NCBI GenBank assembly: GCA_020891255.1
Contig: BQFW01000006.1
Span: forward strand, 1,612,001-1,676,000
Length of the DNA: 64,000 nt
Source of the DNA: Entomortierella parvispora E1425
Taxonomy: Eukaryota; Fungi; Mortierellomycota
Direction: 5' to 3'
The translations under genes were made by a program, and so were the position numbers. Numbering within the stretch: the first letter of the stretch is position 1; every line of letters begins with the position of its first letter. Of the stretch, positions 13,806 to 22,596 are shown one piece after another. Under the pieces are notes generated by a model, which ran no database searches, was not told where the DNA came from, and worked only from the letters and a program-made list of their open reading frames with translations.

Positions 13806-15060
13806 AGAAAGAGAGATGTAATAAACCACACGCGTTTCGCTCTTCATGCAATGACAATGGCCATGATAGAAAAAGAAGCAAACCAAAAAAAAAAAAAAAA
13901 ACGACGCGCTTGTTTTCTTTGGAGTGAACCACAGGTGATGCATGCATGAGACTCATTTGTGCGCGTTCAAAATGGGCCATTGGTGGCTGTTGACGCGTCC
14001 CTTTTGCACCAAGGGCTGAAGGGAAAGAGAAAAAGAGAAAAGCGAGCAATGGAGAAAGGGCCAAGCAGGGCAACCAGGCCCGGTCTGGAGGCAGCGAGAG
14101 AGAGCGAGAGAAGAGAGAGGCTGGGAAGGAAAAAAAATCAGAAACCATCGCGGACAGTGATTCGACGGATTGACGTGACAGCGCAGAAAAGACGCCAATA
14201 ACAGCTCGCCTTGGCTGGGTCTCGGTTGTTTTTGGCTCTCACAGCGGTGGATGCCTCTTCCCTTTTTACCCTCTCACCTTCCCCCCATACCTTGAGTGCT
14301 TGCTTGGTTGCTTGCTTGCCTGCATCGTGTGTCGCGCCTAGTCGAACCTGCGCCCCCTTCTCTCTCGCCGCCTTTGCTCTCTTTGCCTTTGCATGCTCTC
14401 CGTCCTTGCCCATTGTCCAACCCTCTTTATCTCTCCACTGCCTGACTGTGTTGTAGTTGGTGTGAGCAGCTCCAGTGTAAGTGGCAGTTGACCTCCAAAC
14501 GCGCGTACCATCCGTACCATCGGCCATCCCCCAGACAATCGGCTGGGCTTTCCTCGCTCACAAACACTTGCCCATCCTCATACACACGACCCTGCGGTCA
14601 AGTCCTTGACTGAGCGTCAGCACGACGTGAACACGACATCAACACGGGTGGCGGACGTGTCTGCCGCTCTTTTTTTTCTATTCTTCCCTTTCCCTTCCTT
14701 TTCGAACCGTCTGTTTCTTTCTGTCCAACTGCTTCTTCCTCTTTCCCTACCTCCAGTTGGGATTGCGGTCTGCTCCTTGTCCTCCCCCCCCCCTCCCTGC
14801 CTGTTTTTCTATTATTTTTCTTATTTTTTTTGCCCTTTCTGAAAGACAGCAAGAAAGCAAAGAAAAAAAAAACCTTCTTTGCTCAGCATTGGATTGGTCA
14901 TTTGGTTTTCAAATTACATTGCATGTCCGTTTCATTATTCTTTTCTTTCTCCCATTTCTCATTTTCACGTATTTTATAAAATCAGGCATCATCATAGATT
15001 CCTTCCTGTCGGCAAGTGTTTTCATCTTCAAAGTGCCTGTAACGCTCATCTTGTGCCGCC

Positions 15061-18000
15061 ATGGACCTGAAGCTATTGCTGTCGCCAGTGCAGAAGGAGT
15101 CCGAGGCCAACTCGGCCTCGACTTCCCAGAACAACAGCTATGTAGAGCACGCGACTGAAGGCCAGCCAATTTGGCGGCACCCATCGCAACAGCAACAGCA
15201 GCAGCAACCGCCTCAGCATCAGCAAGGATACGAGGATCAGCATCGTCATCATCATCCACAATATCCTCATCGTCCTCAGCAGCAGCAGCATCGTCAGCCA
15301 GAGCGAGAGCCATATGATCCACGCGAGCCTCAGCAATCCTTTAACCCTCAACATCCCCAAGATCAACGCGCGCCGCTCCAAGGACAGCCGCAGTACATCT
15401 CCCACCAAGGCCGTCTCCAAGGTAAGTCTTCATGGCCAAGCATCGTCTCTTTGATATCAAGAGATTTCGCGTGTTGGACACGACATTGACTTGCTGGCGT
15501 TTGTGTTGGGCATTAATGTGCCATTTTAACGTGATAGCTTTCGAGGGTCCTGGAGCAGAAAGACCTTCGGTCTATGCACCGCAGCCGGACCGACACGCGT
15601 ATTATGACAGTGCATCATCGTCACGCGGCCAACCTTTGGGCTCGGACAGGAGTATGGGCCATCCTGTGGATCATGGGACGTCGTATCGTCAAGAATATCG
15701 ACCTTCTGGAGTACGAACACCCCCGCCAAGAAACCCTGCTTTGGTCCCGCCGCTGTTGTCCGTATCAGCATCGACTCCCTTGACAGGAGAGTCGCCCCAG
15801 CCCCCGCAATATTTTGTGCCCACGCACAAGCCAACACCCGCTTACGCTGCACCTCCAGCAGGGTTGAACCTCTCCTCGTTCGGCTTTATGTTGATGGAGA
15901 AACGAGACCGTGAGCGCGAGGCCATGGAGCGTGCAAATAGGACATTTCTCAGAGGAGAGGCTTCGTCTGCTTTGAGAGAGTCTGGACCCATCGCGGATCG
16001 ACCCTCCAGGACCTCGTCGCCTGCGCAGGATGATGCACGTAGAGGGCAGCACGCGCCTTATTCAACGTACGAACAACAGCCATTTGGACACCAGGGCCCG
16101 CCTTCCTCCCGGGACTATTCCGACTATGGCCATTATCCACCGGCTACATCTCACCACCACCCCTCCCACTACCACAGCAGTGGTAGCACCAACATTGGCA
16201 CGATGGACTCTTTCCAGAGCCGTCCACAGGTAACCAAGGTGGCGCCTTTCTTGTTATTATTGATCCATGACGAGACGGCAGTGGACGTTCTGCAGCACTT
16301 GCGATCACGGGAAGAAAGAGTCATTTTTTTGTCTTATGCCAAATACGCCACCAACATTTGCATTTTTTTAATGAGACTGACCCGACTCAAACTCTCTTCA
16401 TTCGTGCTACTGAACGCGTGCGATGTCCTTAGGAGTACGGCCACGATGCCCAAGGATCGTACCTACAACACCAACCATCACATTTGCAGCAGCAGCAGGG
16501 GCGTGCAATGAGTCCAAGCATGGCGGATAGGCCTCGGTTTGCCAATGCCAACCTCTCTGTATTTAGACAAAATGCCGCAGAGGACAGTGATGGCAATGCA
16601 AGTGTATCCTCGAGTGGAAGTCTGAAGCGGCGGAGACGTCCTAATAAGACTTCTGACGGCAAGCGGTCGCTCTTGACAGGGTCTGCTCTTGGAGGTGAAT
16701 CGGGACTCTATCCAATGGCGAGAACGCCCTCTCAGGGCTCGTATGAGGGTCAAGCAGGCTTCTATGACGACGACGATTCATCGGATGAGCAAATCAACGT
16801 CAGGAATGGTCTTCAAGGCCTGAATTTGCAGAAGTCAACAAAGGCATCAGGTACGATACCGAGAAGAATCATCCTCAGTTATCTGCAATTTTAACTCATC
16901 AAGACGTCACATTTTTATTAGTGACCTCCCGTGCCAAGAAGCCCAGGAAAAAGGCAGAGCGTCCGTTCAAGATTGGTGAACTTGTCGAGTCCATGAAGTC
17001 TGACACGGATGGCACCTGGTTCGCTGGTCGTGTTCTGGATCTGGAGGATGATCCTCATGATCACATCAACCCCAAGTCTGTCCTTATCCACTTTGAAGGC
17101 TTTTCGCCTCATCACGACGAGTGGGTCAAGCCAAATCAACTGCGTGCTTGTTCGACTGGAAGCAGTTTTCTTCGTTATGGCCCCTCGGGTCATGAGGCGG
17201 CCGAGAATTGGACCGCTTACGAAAAGTTTTACCACTCGGATTTGGGGCGTGTGGCCCGTCGACATACAGGACTGGCATATGATCGTCGGATGTTACTCCA
17301 CAAATGTCAATGCAACTCCAACCCAGAAGAGCGTCATCACCCTGAACAGCCGGAGCGACTTGTTGAGATCCTTTGCCAGTTCCAAAAGTTGGGCATGCTG
17401 AGTCTCGTCAAATGGGTCCAGGGACGCGAAGCCACGATCGAGGAATTGATCGCCGCCCACACGGATACACACGTCCGAAACTATTGTTGTACTGCCGCTG
17501 AAAACAAAAGATACGCTAGGGAGAACAACATTGACGACCCAGATCTGAACACTGAGGATAGTGTTGACGAGGAGCCAGATGAGGTCGAGGAAGCCCCTAC
17601 AGCCCAGGCGACTGTCGAAGATGAAGAAGCAGGCTCCAAGAAGGTTGTAAGACGTGGGCGACCTAGGAAAGGAACCCGTGGTAGCATTCTTGTACCTACG
17701 ACAGCCACCAGTGTGGATCCCTTAGCTGAAACAACTCCGGAAACAGCAGGAGCCCATGCAAGCGAGGACTCTGAGATGACAGGACCAACATCACCCACAA
17801 CTTTCAAAGAGGGCATGGATATTGATCTTCACTCGCCCGCTCTTGGAAGACGGCGTTCCAGCATGCGAGGCTCTGCCTTGAGAATGTCGTCACTTGTTAG
17901 TATGTCGTCAACCCTGTATGCCCAAAAGGAAGAGGATCTGCTACCTGAGGCTATCAAAGCGTCCTTGGCTCCAGAGGACGAGGACGATGATGACGACAAG

Positions 18001-19878
18001 ACGAACCACGCGGGTCCTGCCCCAAGTGAGGCCGCTGCCGCTGTCGCCGGAGGAATGGATCCCGCCGAAGCAAGCAAGTTGACTGGCTCGCCTCAAATGA
18101 TACCCAAATTTGATTCAAAGGACGACATTCCAGTAAAGAATGAGACGAGCGAGAGGACACGCCCTGAGCGCCGACGTCTTTCAGCAATCGACACACAAAA
18201 GGCGATCAACGACCCTGTTGCCAAATCAGAGGCATCCCCAGCTGGCGTTCGCACAGGGAAGGACCCCATTTCTCCCAAGGAATCGAGTGTCGTCTCTCCT
18301 CTTAGATCCTCTAGTAGGAATATCTCTGCAGAGATTGTTGTGCCACAAAAGGAAAAAGAGTCACCAGAAAAGAAGGCCGGCAACGACAAAGCTGAACAGG
18401 CACCCAAGGAACTTGTCGCGGCAAAGACTCCAATTAAGAAGAAAGGGTACAAGGCCGTTTCCCCTACGCCTGTCCCCTCAAGCGATGCGGTGGCAATCAG
18501 ACCTCCAGGATTGACGTTTACCATGAGTTGTGGACAATTGGGAATTGCTGTCGATACAACATGGAGTCCGTACCACTCTAGTACAGCAGCCAAGGTTGCA
18601 ACTGGATCCTTGATTACACTGGTCGACCAAGTAGTCACTGGACGTTGCAAAAACGGATTCGCTATCATTCGCCCTCCAGGCCATCACGCTGAAGAGGACG
18701 AGGCCATGTAAGGAAATATTTCGTTTACTCTGTTTATTCAATGTTCATCATGTTTCGAAAAAGGCCAAGGTACTAATGTACCTTCTCATTTGCAAACACA
18801 GGGGATTCTGTTTCTTTAACAACGTCGGCGTGGCAGTGAATCTGACACTACAAAGATACCCTCTGACTGTTCAAAAGATTCTTATTATTGACTGGGATGT
18901 GCAGTAAGTTTTGTTGCTGCAGAGACATGTTATTCTGGCATTTGCCTTGGAGATCATTTTGAACTTACGGAGCATTTTTTTTTAAACCGTAGCCATGGAA
19001 ACGGAACTCAGCAGATCTTTTACGAGAACCCCAATGTCTTGTACATTTCTTTGCATCGATGGGACAATGGGCACTTTTATCCTTTCACAGGGGCTCCAGA
19101 TGAGTGCGGTGAAGAAGCTGGCGAAGGCAGGAATGTGAACATTGCTTGGTCATCCTATGGTCGAGGTAAGCCTCGATAATCATTGCTAGTCTTTTGATTC
19201 TGCCTTGTAATGAGATTTGTTTACTAACATTACTCTCCTACTTTTTAGCTCAAGCAATGGGAGATGTAGAGTACATTGCTGCTTTCTGGTATGTGTTGCT
19301 TCCGATCGCGAGACAGTTCCAGCCCGACCTGGTAATGGTGTCAGCAGGATTCGATGCAGCGGATGGCCATGCTTCCAATGTAAGTCTATAAAAATTTGAT
19401 CCGAGTTCTCATTCACTGCCATTTCTAACTCAATGTTGTTCGACATCTTTAGATTGGAGGATACACCGTATCACCTCAAGGATTCGCCATTCTCACCCGA
19501 CTGGTACAGACCCTAGCAGGAGGCCGTGTCATTCTGTCCTTGGAGGGCGGTTATGAATTTGAACCGCTTGCTCTTTCGGCAGCGGCCTGTCTCGAGGAAT
19601 TACTTCCGCACTCCCTTTTGCCAGCGACTGCACCTACTCGTGCATTCCCTTTTGCCTCCTTCCAAGGGACGCTGAACAGTGTCAAGCCCAACGCAATGGC
19701 GGTCTCCTCCCTGCACCAGGTCCTCAAATACCAACAAAAATACTGGAAGTTCCCAGCTGAGGTATTGAACCCAAGTTTCCGGTTCCAACTTCCACAAGAG
19801 TGGAAGGCCAGCAACAGCCTGGCCACTCGTCCGAGAAGGGAGAGGGCGACGCGAAAGAAGGGGGGTGCACTCGATTAA
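15061..19878 (+). CDS. Class II histone deacetylase (HDAC4/5-like fold) with Tudor-knot domain and large intradomain insertion (~1362 aa)
   Basis: Eight exons: 15061-15421, 15538-16229, 16433-16850, 16922-18707, 18802-18903, 18993-19165, 19249-19379 and 19453-19878. Motifs TGLAYD, RPPGHHA, GFCFFNN, DWDVHHGNGTQ, SAGFDA and LEGGY. The 5' exons are less certain than the catalytic ones. Confidence 0.92.
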
Positions 19879-20131
19879 GGAACTCGATAATAACAAAAAG
19901 AAAAAGAAACACCACCGCCGCCACCACACACAGCAACCAACCATATAAGAGGAATACAGTCATACGAGGTCATCTAAAATGTCAAAAAGTGGTGCCCGAT
20001 GAACGGCGCCACACTCCAAGCTGCAACCCAAAGAATAATAAAACAATGTTGCCCAAAAAAAAAAAAAAAAAAAAAGTGTTGGAGGGTACCAGAGCAGGTT
20101 TCTTTTATGGCGTGGGTATGTTGAGCAAATA

Positions 20132-22596
20132 TTAGTTCTTTCCGAGGATATGATAGATCATCTTTGTGACGAATGGGGACAGAACCTGTTCCTCGCGTTG
20201 GTAGAACGACTATGATATATATAAAAAAAAGGGTCAGAAATCAATGGTCCAAAAAAACAAGATACTCCACGTTTCTCTCAATACGGTTACCATAATCAGA
20301 GACATGGCAAAGGAGAACGTCATGACCTCCCAATGCTTGACACCCTTGACCCAATTTTTGCGGTATAAGATCTTGTAAAGACTCTCTGCAGCCTTGGGAG
20401 CCACATACATGGCCAACTCTGCGCGTCTTTGCTCCTGCTCGACCATGATGGCCGATCCCGCACAGGTCAATCCAAAGAGCCAGTAGATGTATTTGCTGTT
20501 GCCGACGGGGAGGCCTGCATTCAAGACGTTTCGGTGAGCGCAGATCTGGGCCTGATAAAGGGAAACAAAAACGGCGAAAAAGACGGAGGATCGCAGCGTG
20601 TTGAAACTCGTCTTGGATGCCACATTCACAGGACTAAGAGAAAAGGAAAAGAAAAAAAAGAGGAAATTAGAGGAAAAAATAGATAGTCTGGTAACAAAGC
20701 AATGGTAGTCAAGATCATCGGGGTCATTCAACTCCCAAAACGCTGATTCGTACTCCTTGAGCAATCTCTTTGTTCTCAGGACAAGTAGCGGCACAAAGTT
20801 GAGGGTAGCATAGACGGGGAAGATGGATTTGGTCACATCGATCAATCGCTCCACGCTGTTGACCGTGCAAGAGTCCTTGCTGGGGTGAAAGACTGCACAG
20901 GTCAGGACTGATGCGTTCTCGGGAATGGCGGACACTACTTCCAATGTCCTGGCTGTGGGTTTGTATTTGTTGACCATGTCTCTCAACATCCTCAAGTCCA
21001 AGGGGAATCCACGAACCGTCGCCCTGTTAAAGGCAAGCATTTCTGGTGTAACGCGGCTAGTCTTGTTCATGAAACCAAAAAACTCTTTTGGGATCGTGTC
21101 CGGATGCATCTACAACAAGCAAGAACAACCTTTAGATACTTGGATCTCCCTCCTGTCCAGTTTGTCCATGTTGGAGGCGCATCAGCTTTGTACTTACTGC
21201 GAACGCGTACAGGACTTGAGCGGATCCAATGGCAAAGAGAACCGCATCTCCGTGCCGGAAAGAAAACTGTCCGCGGTATTTGCCTGCATTGTAGACGCCT
21301 TGCATCGAACTAGCGAAAATTTTCACGAGTCGAGAAAGAAAAAAAAGATCCCGTTGGATATAAGAATTTGTCATCCCGTATGTATACCCTTGGGCCCTAC
21401 TTTGCCCATCTTTCTTTTTTTTTTTTTCCGAGAAAAAGGTTTTTGTGTTGCAGAATCATAAATGGGCTCTGGCAAATAGACACTCACCGGACAAACATTT
21501 GCTGGGTGAAGGTGACTCGACGTTCTGGAGACTCTACAAAAAGAGCAAGGCCAGCAATGGCGCCTTACCCATATTTTTTTCACAAGAGCGGTTCTCAAAA
21601 GTTAGATGTGGGGAGAGAAAGAGGTGGTTGGAGAGAGTAACGAACAATGTCAGACTTGATCGTCGAATGGGTTACTGTTACATACCAGCAATGGCTCCGT
21701 TGATCCTATCGTCCTTTCCACGATACAACTTGAGTCCGTTGTTGACAAACTTCCATAGAAAAGAAAACAGACCGAAAAACGTTCCAATCCGGATGGCGTC
21801 CTGTCCCATGAAGGCATCCTTGAGGAGACCAGCAAGTGAGCCCCTATTTTTTTTTTATCAGAAACATATAAAGCAGCTTGTTACTGTCAGTTCAAAACAT
21901 CCCGATCTGTTTTTTTGTCTAGGCTTATTCTTACCGCCCCTTCATCAGCTTGATCAGACCCAAACAAAAGTTGACAATCGCCTTCATGCCGTAGGAAACA
22001 GTTCCAGAACCTAATGAAAGAGATAAAGATATCAGGTCAGGCTCCACCCCCTCAAATTGATCTCTGGTGGAAGCACATGCAATCCCGATAACAATGCATC
22101 CCGAGCAGGACCTACGAATTGCGCCCAGGGTGGCATGTTTCAACACGCCCTCATAGGTATCACAACGGGCCGAGAGATGAGGGATCGACACGCCAGACTT
22201 GTAGTTTTTGCACTTTTCAGCCGCTTCCAAACCTTCGGGGGTGCGGTACCCCTTTGGCCTCTTGCCATTGATCCAGCCTGATCGATCTTCAGCATATTTC
22301 TTATGTTTGCTGCGACGATTCGTCGATTGGTGTCGATCCTTGGAGGAACGTGCTTGATCCTCGGCAGCAAGGGGAGTTGGCAGTACGGGCGCTTCTGCGC
22401 TGGTCATTAACAAGGCTCTGTCCAAATCGGCAATAATGTGGGTGGAGGATGATCGAGACAGTGGCCGAGAGGATCCGTCCGCAGTGGCGTAGGAGGAGGA
22501 GGAAAGGGAAGAGGACGACGAGGAAGAGGAGGGAACTGAAATGTCTGCTGCGTCGACAGCATCTGCTGGGTCGATGGATGGCGGATGGTCTGCCAT
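20132..22596 (-). CDS. TMEM135: TMEM135 family (peroxisomal/mitochondrial) membrane protein, multi-exon
   Basis: Segments FGLFSFLWK, NGAIAG, AIGSAQVLYAF, HPDTIPKEFFGFM, FPVYATLNFVP, RRAELAMYVAPKAAES and YQREEQVLSP fit the family. Internal exon borders were only partly traced. Confidence 0.8.

What the first reader, a model, noticed from the sequence alone, without database searches (positions are those of the whole stretch)
16966..17151. Tudor-knot/chromo-barrel reader fused directly in front of the HDAC domain
Seen: [10 protein letters not shown]...WFAGRVLD...[22 protein letters not shown] lies in the same exon as, and ~40 aa before, the start of the HDAC domain. Established: this pattern (HY/FxGW/F...DEWV) is the chromo-barrel of Esa1/MOF/Eaf3/MRG15, found in acetyltransferases or as a separate HDAC-complex subunit and binding methyl-lysine or nucleic acid. 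I know of no characterised HDAC with it in cis. Inference: a self-targeting reader-eraser, analogous to Rpd3S-Eaf3 in a single chain.
Basis: partly seen in the sequence, partly recalled or inferred. Interest (0 to 1): 0.72.

Follow-up and report, generated by a model that had tools for sequence, protein, structure and literature searches.

The report
Histone-mark reader fused to fungal deacetylase
This soil fungus (family Mortierellaceae) and its whole phylum carry a histone deacetylase with a small Tudor/chromo-barrel "reader" domain built into the same protein just before the enzyme, an arrangement that no paper found in these searches describes and that may let the enzyme find its own chromatin targets.

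Summary
Window 16966-17151 encodes a five-strand barrel in the same exon (16922-18707) as the start of a deacetylase domain.

- **Pfam:** it misses its own cut-offs (Tudor-knot 17.1 of 20.8 bits).
- **Sequence profiles:** a 21-sequence family profile matches solved MRG2, MRG15, Eaf3, PHF20L1 and MSL3 barrels (E 2e-6 to 2e-4). It also matches a profile of segments most of which Pfam itself calls Tudor-knot (hhalign 98.8%).
- **Fold:** an AlphaFold model (pLDDT 88.7) matches almost only Royal-family folds.
- **Linker:** the 38 residues after the barrel form two conserved helices, not a loose linker.
- **Enzyme:** it is class IIa-like (HDAC4 is the best match, the CCHC zinc ligands are invariant) and keeps the catalytic tyrosine.
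- **Distribution:** an exhaustive search found the fusion only in Mortierellaceae, Mucoromycotina and Glomeromycotina.
- **Literature:** no paper found describes it.

Three of the four Eaf3/MRG15 cage positions are aromatic and the fourth is His. The barrel is acidic. Glomeromycotina have lost cage residues yet keep the domain.

Verdict: a real, lineage-wide new variant of a known kind. The binding function is inferred.

The parts
15061..19878 (+). Whole gene, 8 exons, predicted product 1362 aa. Exons: 15061-15421, 15538-16229, 16433-16850, 16922-18707, 18802-18903, 18993-19165, 19249-19379, 19453-19878 (stop 19876-78).
   Evidence: Splice sites read from the sequence. Exon products match spliced orthologues P0002, P0008 and P0011. 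Each downstream exon hits successive parts of Pfam PF00850.
15061..16850 (+). About 490 aa low-complexity (Q/H/P/S-rich) N-terminal region, exons 1-3, with one conserved island at 15735-15941.
   Evidence: No Pfam domain. Start 'MDLKLLLSP' and a 128-aa block (53% identity) are shared with the 1390-aa Lunasporangiospora orthologue P0011.
16936..16953 (+). Basic patch KKPRKK directly before the barrel; NLS-like by inference.
   Evidence: Read from the translation. Similar basic runs stand before the barrel in orthologues.
16966..17148 (+). Tudor-knot/chromo-barrel-like five-strand barrel. Model strands: 16981-16995, 17017-17046, 17077-17094, 17119-17127, 17140-17148.
   Evidence: AF2 model pLDDT 88.7, pTM 0.80. 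Foldseek and VIA top matches are almost all Royal-family folds: MRG2 56/56 residues at rmsd 1.6, Tb Tudor Z 8.2. Family profile against PDB sequences: MRG2 1.7e-6, MRG15 1e-5, Eaf3 3e-5. hhalign 98.8%.
17020..17115 (+). Span holding the positions equivalent to the Eaf3/MRG15 aromatic cage: F23 (17020-22), F47 (17092-94), F50 (17101-03), H54 (17113-15). Numbering is from 16954.
   Evidence: Alignments to Eaf3 and MRG2. Column table across 21 orthologues. Which residues form the cage in Eaf3 and MRG15 is from my own knowledge.
17149..17265 (+). Conserved linker with two helices (17200-17235, 17239-17262) joining the barrel to the catalytic domain.
   Evidence: Block-mean pLDDT 87-92 over most of the helices, 78 at the last residues. 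Nearly invariant G76, G79, W86, Y89, F92, Y93, S95. Weak likeness to the MBT inter-repeat arm (10.5 bits, not significant alone).
17266..17484 (+). First segment of the class IIa-like HDAC domain. Holds three of the four class IIa structural-zinc ligands: Cys 17305-07, Cys 17311-13, His 17338-40.
   Evidence: Pfam PF00850. C-x-C and H are invariant in the 12-sequence orthologue alignment. Coordinates. The CCHC assignment by analogy with HDAC4 is from my own knowledge.
17485..18522 (+). 346-aa disordered insert inside the HDAC domain, in the class IIa-specific loop. Contains RRGRPRKG (17650-17673), [10 protein letters not shown] (17845-17874) and an acidic run (17974-17997).
   Evidence: Pfam match split at profile position 67/68. 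No large insert in Glomeromycotina; about 85 aa unaligned in Syncephalastrum and about 160 in Bifiguratus. Motifs.
18523..19875 (+). Rest of the HDAC domain and C-terminal tail across exons 4-8. Fourth zinc ligand Cys 18529-31, catalytic His-His 18682-87, catalytic Tyr of EGGY 19552-54.
   Evidence: Pfam PF00850 on every exon. Best single-domain solved match is HDAC4 at 344 bits, against HDAC6 266, Clr3 263 and Hda1 237. Motifs located.

Best explanation
**Shown.** The gene encodes a class IIa-type zinc deacetylase predicted to be catalytically competent. A Royal-family barrel of the Tudor-knot/chromo-barrel kind is fused, through a conserved two-helix connector, directly to the N-terminus of the catalytic domain. 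This architecture is conserved across Mortierellomycotina, Mucoromycotina and Glomeromycotina.

**Inferred.** In Mortierellaceae and Mucoromycotina the acidic barrel uses a three-aromatic pocket (F23, F47, F50, plus H54) to hold a basic, probably methylated, lysine-bearing histone tail. The stiff connector would then place the active site next to the bound nucleosome, so that neighbouring acetyl-lysines are removed. That is reader and eraser in one chain. The barrel would fill the targeting role that the N-terminal adaptor region has in animal class IIa enzymes, and that the separate Eaf3 subunit has for Rpd3S. The mark that is read is unknown. The nearest sequence relatives read H3K36me3 (Eaf3/MRG) or H4K20me1 (MSL3).
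For: - **Same exon:** one continuous ORF.
- **Barrel fold:** model pLDDT 88.7.
- **Fold matches:** almost only Royal-family folds. Seven of ten Atlas neighbour rows are Tudor-knot clusters, MYST acetyltransferases among them.
- **Profile against PDB:** MRG2 1.7e-6, MRG15 1e-5, Eaf3 3e-5, PHF20L1 5e-5, MSL3 2e-4, MOF 7e-4.
- **hhalign:** 98.8% to segments, 8 of 11 of which Pfam calls Tudor-knot.
- **Cage:** three positions are aromatic in every complete Mortierellaceae and Mucoromycotina sequence.
- **Charge:** the barrel has net charge -1 to -9 in all 21 sequences, which fits a basic peptide ligand and not nucleic acid.
- **Connector:** it is conserved.
- **Enzyme:** catalytic His-His and EGGY Tyr are present. 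CCHC is invariant. HDAC4 is the best solved match.
- **Distribution:** the fusion is found in about 20 named species of three subphyla.
Against: - No binding, localisation or expression data; no RNA run was listed.
- Pfam gathering thresholds are not met for any Royal-family model.
- The fourth cage wall (Trp in Eaf3/MRG15) is His here and varies elsewhere: E, Q, Y, H.
- Glomeromycotina have T, A or V at the first cage position and Met for the core Trp, yet keep barrel and connector. The function shared by the whole family may therefore not need a cage.
- The full-length fold failed (pLDDT 49.5), so the geometry between barrel and active site is unknown.
Confidence: 0.5

Rival explanations
1. 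The barrel is not a mark reader. It is a structural or regulatory module: it docks on the catalytic domain through the conserved helices, or it recruits a partner protein. Its role is to stabilise or gate the class IIa-type active site or to assemble a complex.
For: The connector is as conserved as the barrel. Glomeromycotina keep barrel and connector although cage positions are lost. The fourth cage wall varies. Many Royal-family domains serve as protein-protein modules (own knowledge).
Against: Three aromatic cage positions are strictly kept across Mortierellaceae and Mucoromycotina. The nearest sequence relatives are known methyl-lysine readers. No interdomain model of usable quality exists to show docking.
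Confidence: 0.28
2. The barrel binds RNA or DNA, as reported for the Tudor-knot of Esa1 and the MOF chromo-barrel, and tethers the enzyme to nucleic acid.
For: The closest Pfam model by name is 'RNA binding activity-knot of a chromodomain'. A basic patch stands just before the barrel. An AT-hook-like RGRPRK lies in the insert of 9 of 11 Mortierellaceae orthologues.
Against: The barrel itself is acidic in all 21 sequences, net -6 in the window. The basic elements lie outside it, and the RGRP core is missing from the four Mucoromycotina and Glomeromycotina orthologues checked that have an insert or the loop region; Absidia has one RGRP, but before the barrel.
Confidence: 0.1
3. The barrel reads a methylated non-histone protein. 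The enzyme would act mainly on non-histone substrates, as HDAC6 does, or serve as a scaffold, as vertebrate class IIa enzymes do.
For: Class II enzymes often act off chromatin (own knowledge). PHF20L1 Tudor, one of the profile matches, reads methylated non-histone proteins (titles).
Against: NLS-like basic patches and an AT-hook-like motif point to a nuclear protein. The strongest full-domain matches are histone readers.
Confidence: 0.1
4. The fusion is an artefact: a chance motif, or a wrong gene model that joins two genes.
For: None beyond the sub-threshold Pfam scores.
Against: Barrel and HDAC start lie in one uninterrupted ORF and exon. The same order is found in independent genomes of three subphyla. 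The fold model has high confidence.
Confidence: 0.02

Closest known systems
Eaf3/MRG15/MRG2 chromo-barrel (H3K36me3 reader of Rpd3S and NuA4)
   Same: Same fold and best full-domain sequence matches: MRG2 1.7e-6, rmsd 1.6 A over 56/56 residues, 25% identity. It shares the H-[YF]-x-G-[WF] ... D-E-W pattern and three aromatic cage positions. Like Eaf3, the barrel is linked functionally to a deacetylase.
   Different: Eaf3 is a separate subunit that carries an MRG domain and serves a class I enzyme (Rpd3). Here the barrel is covalently fused to a class IIa-like enzyme, there is no MRG domain, and the fourth cage Trp is His.
Animal class IIa HDACs (HDAC4/5/7/9)
   Same: Best solved match for the catalytic domain (344 bits). 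The class IIa structural-zinc ligands C-x-C, H and C are invariant. A long regulatory region lies N-terminal to the catalytic domain.
   Different: The catalytic Tyr is kept (EGGY), whereas vertebrate enzymes have His (own knowledge). No Pfam family specific to the class IIa N-terminus was reported upstream of the barrel. A Royal-family barrel stands there instead. A 346-aa insert sits in the zinc-binding loop.
Esa1/MOF/Tip60 Tudor-knot and MSL3 chromo-barrel
   Same: Weak Pfam hits to Tudor-knot and MSL3_chromo-like. Profile hits to MSL3 (2e-4) and MOF (7e-4). MYST clusters are among the Atlas structural neighbours.
   Different: Those barrels are fused to, or work with, acetyltransferases (writers). 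Here the partner is the opposing eraser. This barrel is acidic, unlike a nucleic-acid binder.
KDM4/JMJD2 demethylases with double Tudor; HDAC6 with ZnF-UBP; Hda1/Clr3 with Arb2
   Same: These are precedents for an eraser that carries a recognition domain in cis.
   Different: Different enzyme (KDM4) or a different, non-Royal recognition domain placed C-terminal to the deacetylase (HDAC6, Hda1/Clr3). None has a chromo-barrel in front of an HDAC domain (own knowledge; no counter-example in the paper searches).
MBT repeats (L3MBTL1/3, SCML2)
   Same: Best whole-sequence profile score (2.7e-7), summed over three repeats. The barrel shares the 'H-F-[DE]-G-[WF]' motif. The connector aligns weakly with the inter-repeat arm. 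Foldseek matches cover 95-100 residues.
   Different: There is a single barrel, not a repeat array. Each stretch scores only about 10 bits, and Pfam MBT matched just 1 of 21 members.

Membership tests
Royal family, Tudor-knot/chromo-barrel type (Pfam PF11717 and relatives) | Five-strand SH3-like barrel fold | tested here: met
   AF2 model pLDDT 88.7 with five strands. VIA Z 7.3-8.2 with full coverage of small Tudor and chromo-barrel domains. Foldseek TM 0.85 by target to MRG2. Atlas neighbours are mostly Tudor-knot clusters.
Royal family, Tudor-knot/chromo-barrel type (Pfam PF11717 and relatives) | Score above Pfam's gathering threshold | tested here: not met
   Tudor-knot 17.1 bits against a cut-off of 20.8; SAWADEE 18.4 against 28; Agenet 14.7 against 27; MSL3_chromo-like 14.1 against 28. 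No Royal-family match above its cut-off was seen for any orthologue (best E 1.9e-5 to 2.8e-4).
Royal family, Tudor-knot/chromo-barrel type (Pfam PF11717 and relatives) | Significant profile-level homology to accepted members | tested here: met
   Family profile against PDB sequences: MRG2 1.7e-6, MRG15 1e-5, Eaf3 3e-5, PHF20L1 5e-5. hhalign 98.8%, E 6e-17, to an alignment in which 8 of 11 segments match PF11717. Caveat: those segments were picked from hits of this family's own profile.
Royal family, Tudor-knot/chromo-barrel type (Pfam PF11717 and relatives) | Aromatic cage for methyl-lysine (four residues in Eaf3/MRG15) | tested here: inconclusive
   F23, F47 and F50 are aromatic. The fourth position is His in the window and varies elsewhere. 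Glomeromycotina lack the first.
Royal family, Tudor-knot/chromo-barrel type (Pfam PF11717 and relatives) | Binding of a methylated peptide or nucleic acid | not testable with these tools
   Needs peptide arrays, ITC or gel shifts.
Class IIa histone deacetylases | Catalytic domain closest to HDAC4/5/7/9 | tested here: met
   Single-domain scores of orthologue P0091: HDAC4 344 bits, HDAC7 326, HDAC6 CD2 266, Clr3 263, HDA15 259, Hda1 237. No phylogeny was built.
Class IIa histone deacetylases | Structural zinc site C-x-C ... H ... C | tested here: met
   All four ligand positions are invariant in 12 orthologues. Window positions 17305-13, 17338-40 and 18529-31. Equivalence to the HDAC4 ligands is from my own knowledge.
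Class IIa histone deacetylases | N-terminal adaptor region (MEF2-binding and glutamine-rich domain, 14-3-3 sites) | tested here: not met
   No Pfam family was reported on exons 1-3 or on the N-termini of full orthologues. A chromo-barrel stands there instead.
Class IIa histone deacetylases | Catalytic Tyr replaced by His (vertebrate class IIa) | tested here: not met
   EGGY is present at 19543-54, so the enzyme is predicted to be fully active.
Rpd3S-type reader-guided deacetylation | Class I Rpd3 catalytic subunit with separate Eaf3 and Rco1 reader subunits | tested here: not met
Only the logic, barrel plus deacetylase, is shared.

The most novel reading that the evidence does not exclude
Mucoromycota carry an ancient single-chain, methyl-lysine-guided class IIa deacetylase that is fully active (Tyr kept). 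It would be the first HDAC whose histone-mark reader is part of the catalytic polypeptide. It would also show a way of targeting class IIa enzymes unrelated to the animal MEF2 and 14-3-3 adaptor system. In Mortierellaceae it may be further tuned by a 346-aa insert in the zinc-binding loop that carries an AT-hook-like motif and a conserved cluster of basophilic-kinase-type serines.
Probability: 0.3. Interest if true: 0.72.

Novelty: new variant of a known kind. Interest (0 to 1): 0.56.

Why it matters
Coupling a reader to an eraser is a central idea in chromatin biology. For zinc deacetylases it is known through multi-subunit complexes such as Rpd3S with Eaf3. A covalent barrel-HDAC fusion kept for hundreds of millions of years in a whole fungal phylum offers three things:

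- a simple, genetically tractable system for testing how mark reading steers deacetylation. Mucor and Rhizopus can be transformed, and Mortierella is an industrial oil producer;
- an active class IIa-type enzyme, which bears on the long debate over what class IIa catalytic domains do;
- a natural comparison, because Glomeromycotina have eroded the pocket.

The barrel falls below Pfam thresholds, so domain-architecture surveys based on Pfam would miss the fusion. That may explain why no paper found mentions it.

Tried and rejected
- **Full-length fold.** Folding the insert-free Gigaspora orthologue P0091 with a 12-sequence alignment, to see how the barrel sits on the catalytic domain, gave mean pLDDT 49.5. 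The model is unusable.
- **RNA evidence.** No run was listed for window 15000-19900.
- **Atlas feature search.** The search on the barrel of P0002 gave no usable hit.
- **Word-index searches.** P0019 residues 300-480 returned only one new relative, from Choanephora. The full-length alignment A3 was swamped by two-domain animal HDAC6, though it added Cetraspora, Acaulospora and Diversispora.
- **Literature.** Eight full-text searches, with one paper checked in each of two of them, found no description of the fusion.
- **MBT origin.** I considered an MBT-repeat origin for barrel plus connector. The support is too weak, about 10 bits per stretch.
- **PWWP or SETDB1-like unit.** I considered a barrel-plus-helices unit of this kind. 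Matches cover 82-89 residues but at rmsd about 4 A, so I do not claim it.
- **Not done.** There was no exhaustive check for unrelated Royal-domain-HDAC fusions elsewhere in eukaryotes, because no architecture search tool was on hand. The exhaustive HMMER search tests only homologues of this barrel.
Full report
**What is in the sequence**

The finding's peptide is encoded at 16966-17145 on the + strand, inside a 596-codon open frame at 16921-18711. Splice signals read from the sequence, plus spliced orthologues, give an 8-exon gene at 15061-19878 with a predicted product of 1362 aa. Exon 4 (16922-18707) holds the barrel, a 38-residue connector, the first part of a deacetylase domain, a 346-aa insert, and the next part of the deacetylase domain. 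The barrel-HDAC fusion therefore depends on no splice prediction. Pfam Hist_deacetyl matches exon 4 (1.3e-16), and exons 5-8 match successive parts of the same profile.

**Is the barrel real?**

Pfam gives only sub-threshold hits on the isolated domain, all to Royal-family models:

| Model | E-value | Bits | Cut-off |
|---|---|---|---|
| SAWADEE | 0.0024 | 18.4 | 28 |
| Tudor-knot | 0.0052 | 17.1 | 20.8 |
| Agenet | 0.045 | 14.7 | 27 |
| MSL3_chromo-like | 0.049 | 14.1 | 28 |

A single-sequence search of solved structures gave Eaf3 (0.003), the eggless Tudor and MOF.

A word search found nine Mortierellaceae orthologues, 86-93% identical over the first 100 residues. They include Lobosporangium, Linnemannia and Gryganskiella, and all carry PF00850.

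A profile of these sequences (A1) was run exhaustively against 1.84 billion representative proteins and gave 79 hits at E up to 1e-3. The hits that also contain an HDAC domain, found by local phmmer, come from three groups wherever a source names the organism; two short metagenome fragments carry no name:

- **Mortierellaceae**
- **Glomeromycotina:** Gigaspora, Dentiscutata, Scutellospora, Racocetra, Cetraspora, Acaulospora, Diversispora
- **Mucoromycotina:** Bifiguratus, Syncephalastrum, Rhizopus, Absidia, Choanephora

The other hits that I scanned are multi-Tudor proteins that pass Pfam's own Tudor-knot or Chromo_MORC2 thresholds.

A 21-sequence alignment across the three subphyla (A2) gave these results:

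- **Profile against PDB sequences:** MRG2 chromo-barrel 1.7e-6, MRG15 1e-5, Eaf3 3e-5, PHF20L1 Tudor 5e-5, MSL3 2e-4, MOF 7e-4, and L3MBTL3 2.7e-7 summed over its repeats.
- **AlphaFold model:** mean pLDDT 88.7, pTM 0.80, with five strands and two C-terminal helices.
- **Foldseek:** the top 50 matches are almost all Royal-family folds. MRG2 has TM 0.85 by target at rmsd 2.1.
- **VIA:** Z 7.3-8.2, covering whole small domains. Tb Tudor aligns 60/60 residues and MRG2 56/56 at rmsd 1.6 with 25% identity.
- **Atlas:** seven of ten nearest cluster rows are Tudor-knot clusters, MYST acetyltransferases among them.
- **hhalign:** 98.8% probability, E 6e-17, to an alignment of segments of which 8 of 11 match PF11717.

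So the observation and the family assignment hold. The caveat is that no member was seen to reach a Pfam gathering score.

**The connector**

The stretch between barrel and HDAC domain is conserved. G76, G79, W86, Y89, F92, Y93 and S95 are nearly invariant. The model folds it into two helices, with block-mean pLDDT 87-92 over most of them. It aligns weakly with the arm between MBT repeats, which I treat only as a hint. In Absidia an extra low-complexity stretch separates the barrel from the connector.

**The enzyme**

Per-domain scores of the insert-free orthologue P0091 against solved structures place HDAC4 first:

| Solved match | Bits |
|---|---|
| HDAC4 | 344 |
| HDAC7 | 326 |
| HDAC6 CD2 | 266 |
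| Clr3 | 263 |
| HDA15 | 259 |
| Hda1 | 237 |

The C-x-C, H and C positions that bind the class IIa structural zinc in HDAC4 (own knowledge) are invariant in 12 orthologues. The His-His pair and the EGGY tyrosine are present. This agrees with the scan's neighbouring note s1-185181. The insert sits in the class IIa-specific loop, and its length differs by lineage: no large insert in Glomeromycotina, about 85 unaligned residues in Syncephalastrum, about 160 in Bifiguratus, and 330-380 in Mortierellaceae.

**How it may work**

Alignments to Eaf3 and MRG2 map the four Eaf3/MRG15 cage residues (own knowledge of which they are) onto F23, F47, F50 and H54.

- The first three are aromatic in every complete Mortierellaceae and Mucoromycotina sequence.
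- The fourth varies: H, E, Q or Y.
- Glomeromycotina have T, A or V at the first position and Met in place of the core Trp.
- The barrel is acidic in all 21 sequences, net -6 in the window. This fits a basic histone tail better than nucleic acid.

My best reading, at 0.5, is a cis reader-eraser: the barrel holds a methylated or basic histone tail and the connector positions the active site beside it. The main rival, at 0.28, is a structural or partner-binding role that needs no cage. The Glomeromycotina erosion and the strong conservation of the connector favour that rival. Nucleic-acid binding and non-histone targets are less likely. An artefact is excluded.

**Known or new**

Eight full-text searches found no description of a Tudor or chromo-barrel-HDAC fusion, or of class IIa-type HDACs in early-diverging fungi. 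I also checked two papers directly:

- The eukaryote-wide chromatin survey mentions no such architecture in the passages I read.
- A survey of HDACs in 1451 species says only that HDAC4-type enzymes are missing from most fungi.

Public records call these proteins 'histone deacetylase 4/5' or 'hypothetical'. One Rhizopus fragment is auto-named 'Tudor domain-containing protein', so automatic pipelines see the barrel in places. I rate the finding a new variant of a known kind: the parts and the logic are known, while the covalent combination is undescribed and spans three fungal subphyla.

**Limits**

- No expression data; no RNA run was listed.
- No usable interdomain model.
- No phylogeny of the HDAC domain.
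- No exhaustive search for unrelated reader-HDAC fusions in other eukaryotes.

Noticed in passing
window 17650-17673: AT-hook-like motif RRGRPRKG inside the disordered insert of the HDAC domain. The RGRP core is present in 9 of 11 Mortierellaceae orthologues and absent from the four Mucoromycotina and Glomeromycotina orthologues checked that cover this loop; Absidia has one RGRP, but before the barrel.
   Followed up: partly
window 17845-17874 and flanks: The block '[23 protein letters not shown]' is nearly identical in all 11 Mortierellaceae orthologues, inside an otherwise fast-evolving insert. It looks like a cluster of basophilic-kinase sites and recalls the phospho-regulation of animal class IIa HDACs.
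   Followed up: partly
window 15735-15941: A conserved island in the otherwise low-complexity N-terminal region (exon 2), 53% identical over 128 aa to Lunasporangiospora P0011. It matches no Pfam family.
   Followed up: partly
window 17485-18522; orthologues P0091, P0095, P0019: The insert in the class IIa zinc-binding loop differs by lineage: no large insert in Glomeromycotina, about 85 unaligned residues in Syncephalastrum, about 160 in Bifiguratus, and about 330-380 in Mortierellaceae.
   Followed up: partly
orthologues P0091, P0057, P0126, P0129, P0130: Glomeromycotina orthologues have lost the first cage aromatic (T, A or V) and the core Trp (Met). Diversispora has also lost the H-F of the HFEGW motif. 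All of them keep the barrel and connector.
   Followed up: yes
public orthologues P0002, P0007, P0008, P0107, P0057, P0095: Several deposited gene models look faulty. Some have N-termini truncated relative to P0011 and this window. P0107 and P0095 lack the DWDxHHGNGTQ motif, and P0057 lacks a piece near the GGY region.
   Followed up: no
window 17149-17265: The connector ('L-R-Y-G-P-x-G-x-E ... W-x-x-Y') aligns weakly with the arm between MBT repeats of L3MBTL3 ('L-H-P-P-K-G-Y-K-E-E-E-F-N-W-Q-T-Y-L'). This is a possible trace of an MBT-like ancestry.
   Followed up: partly
window 20055-20076: A long A-run in the short spacer between the stop of this gene and the convergent minus-strand ORF at 20234-21109.
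   Followed up: no
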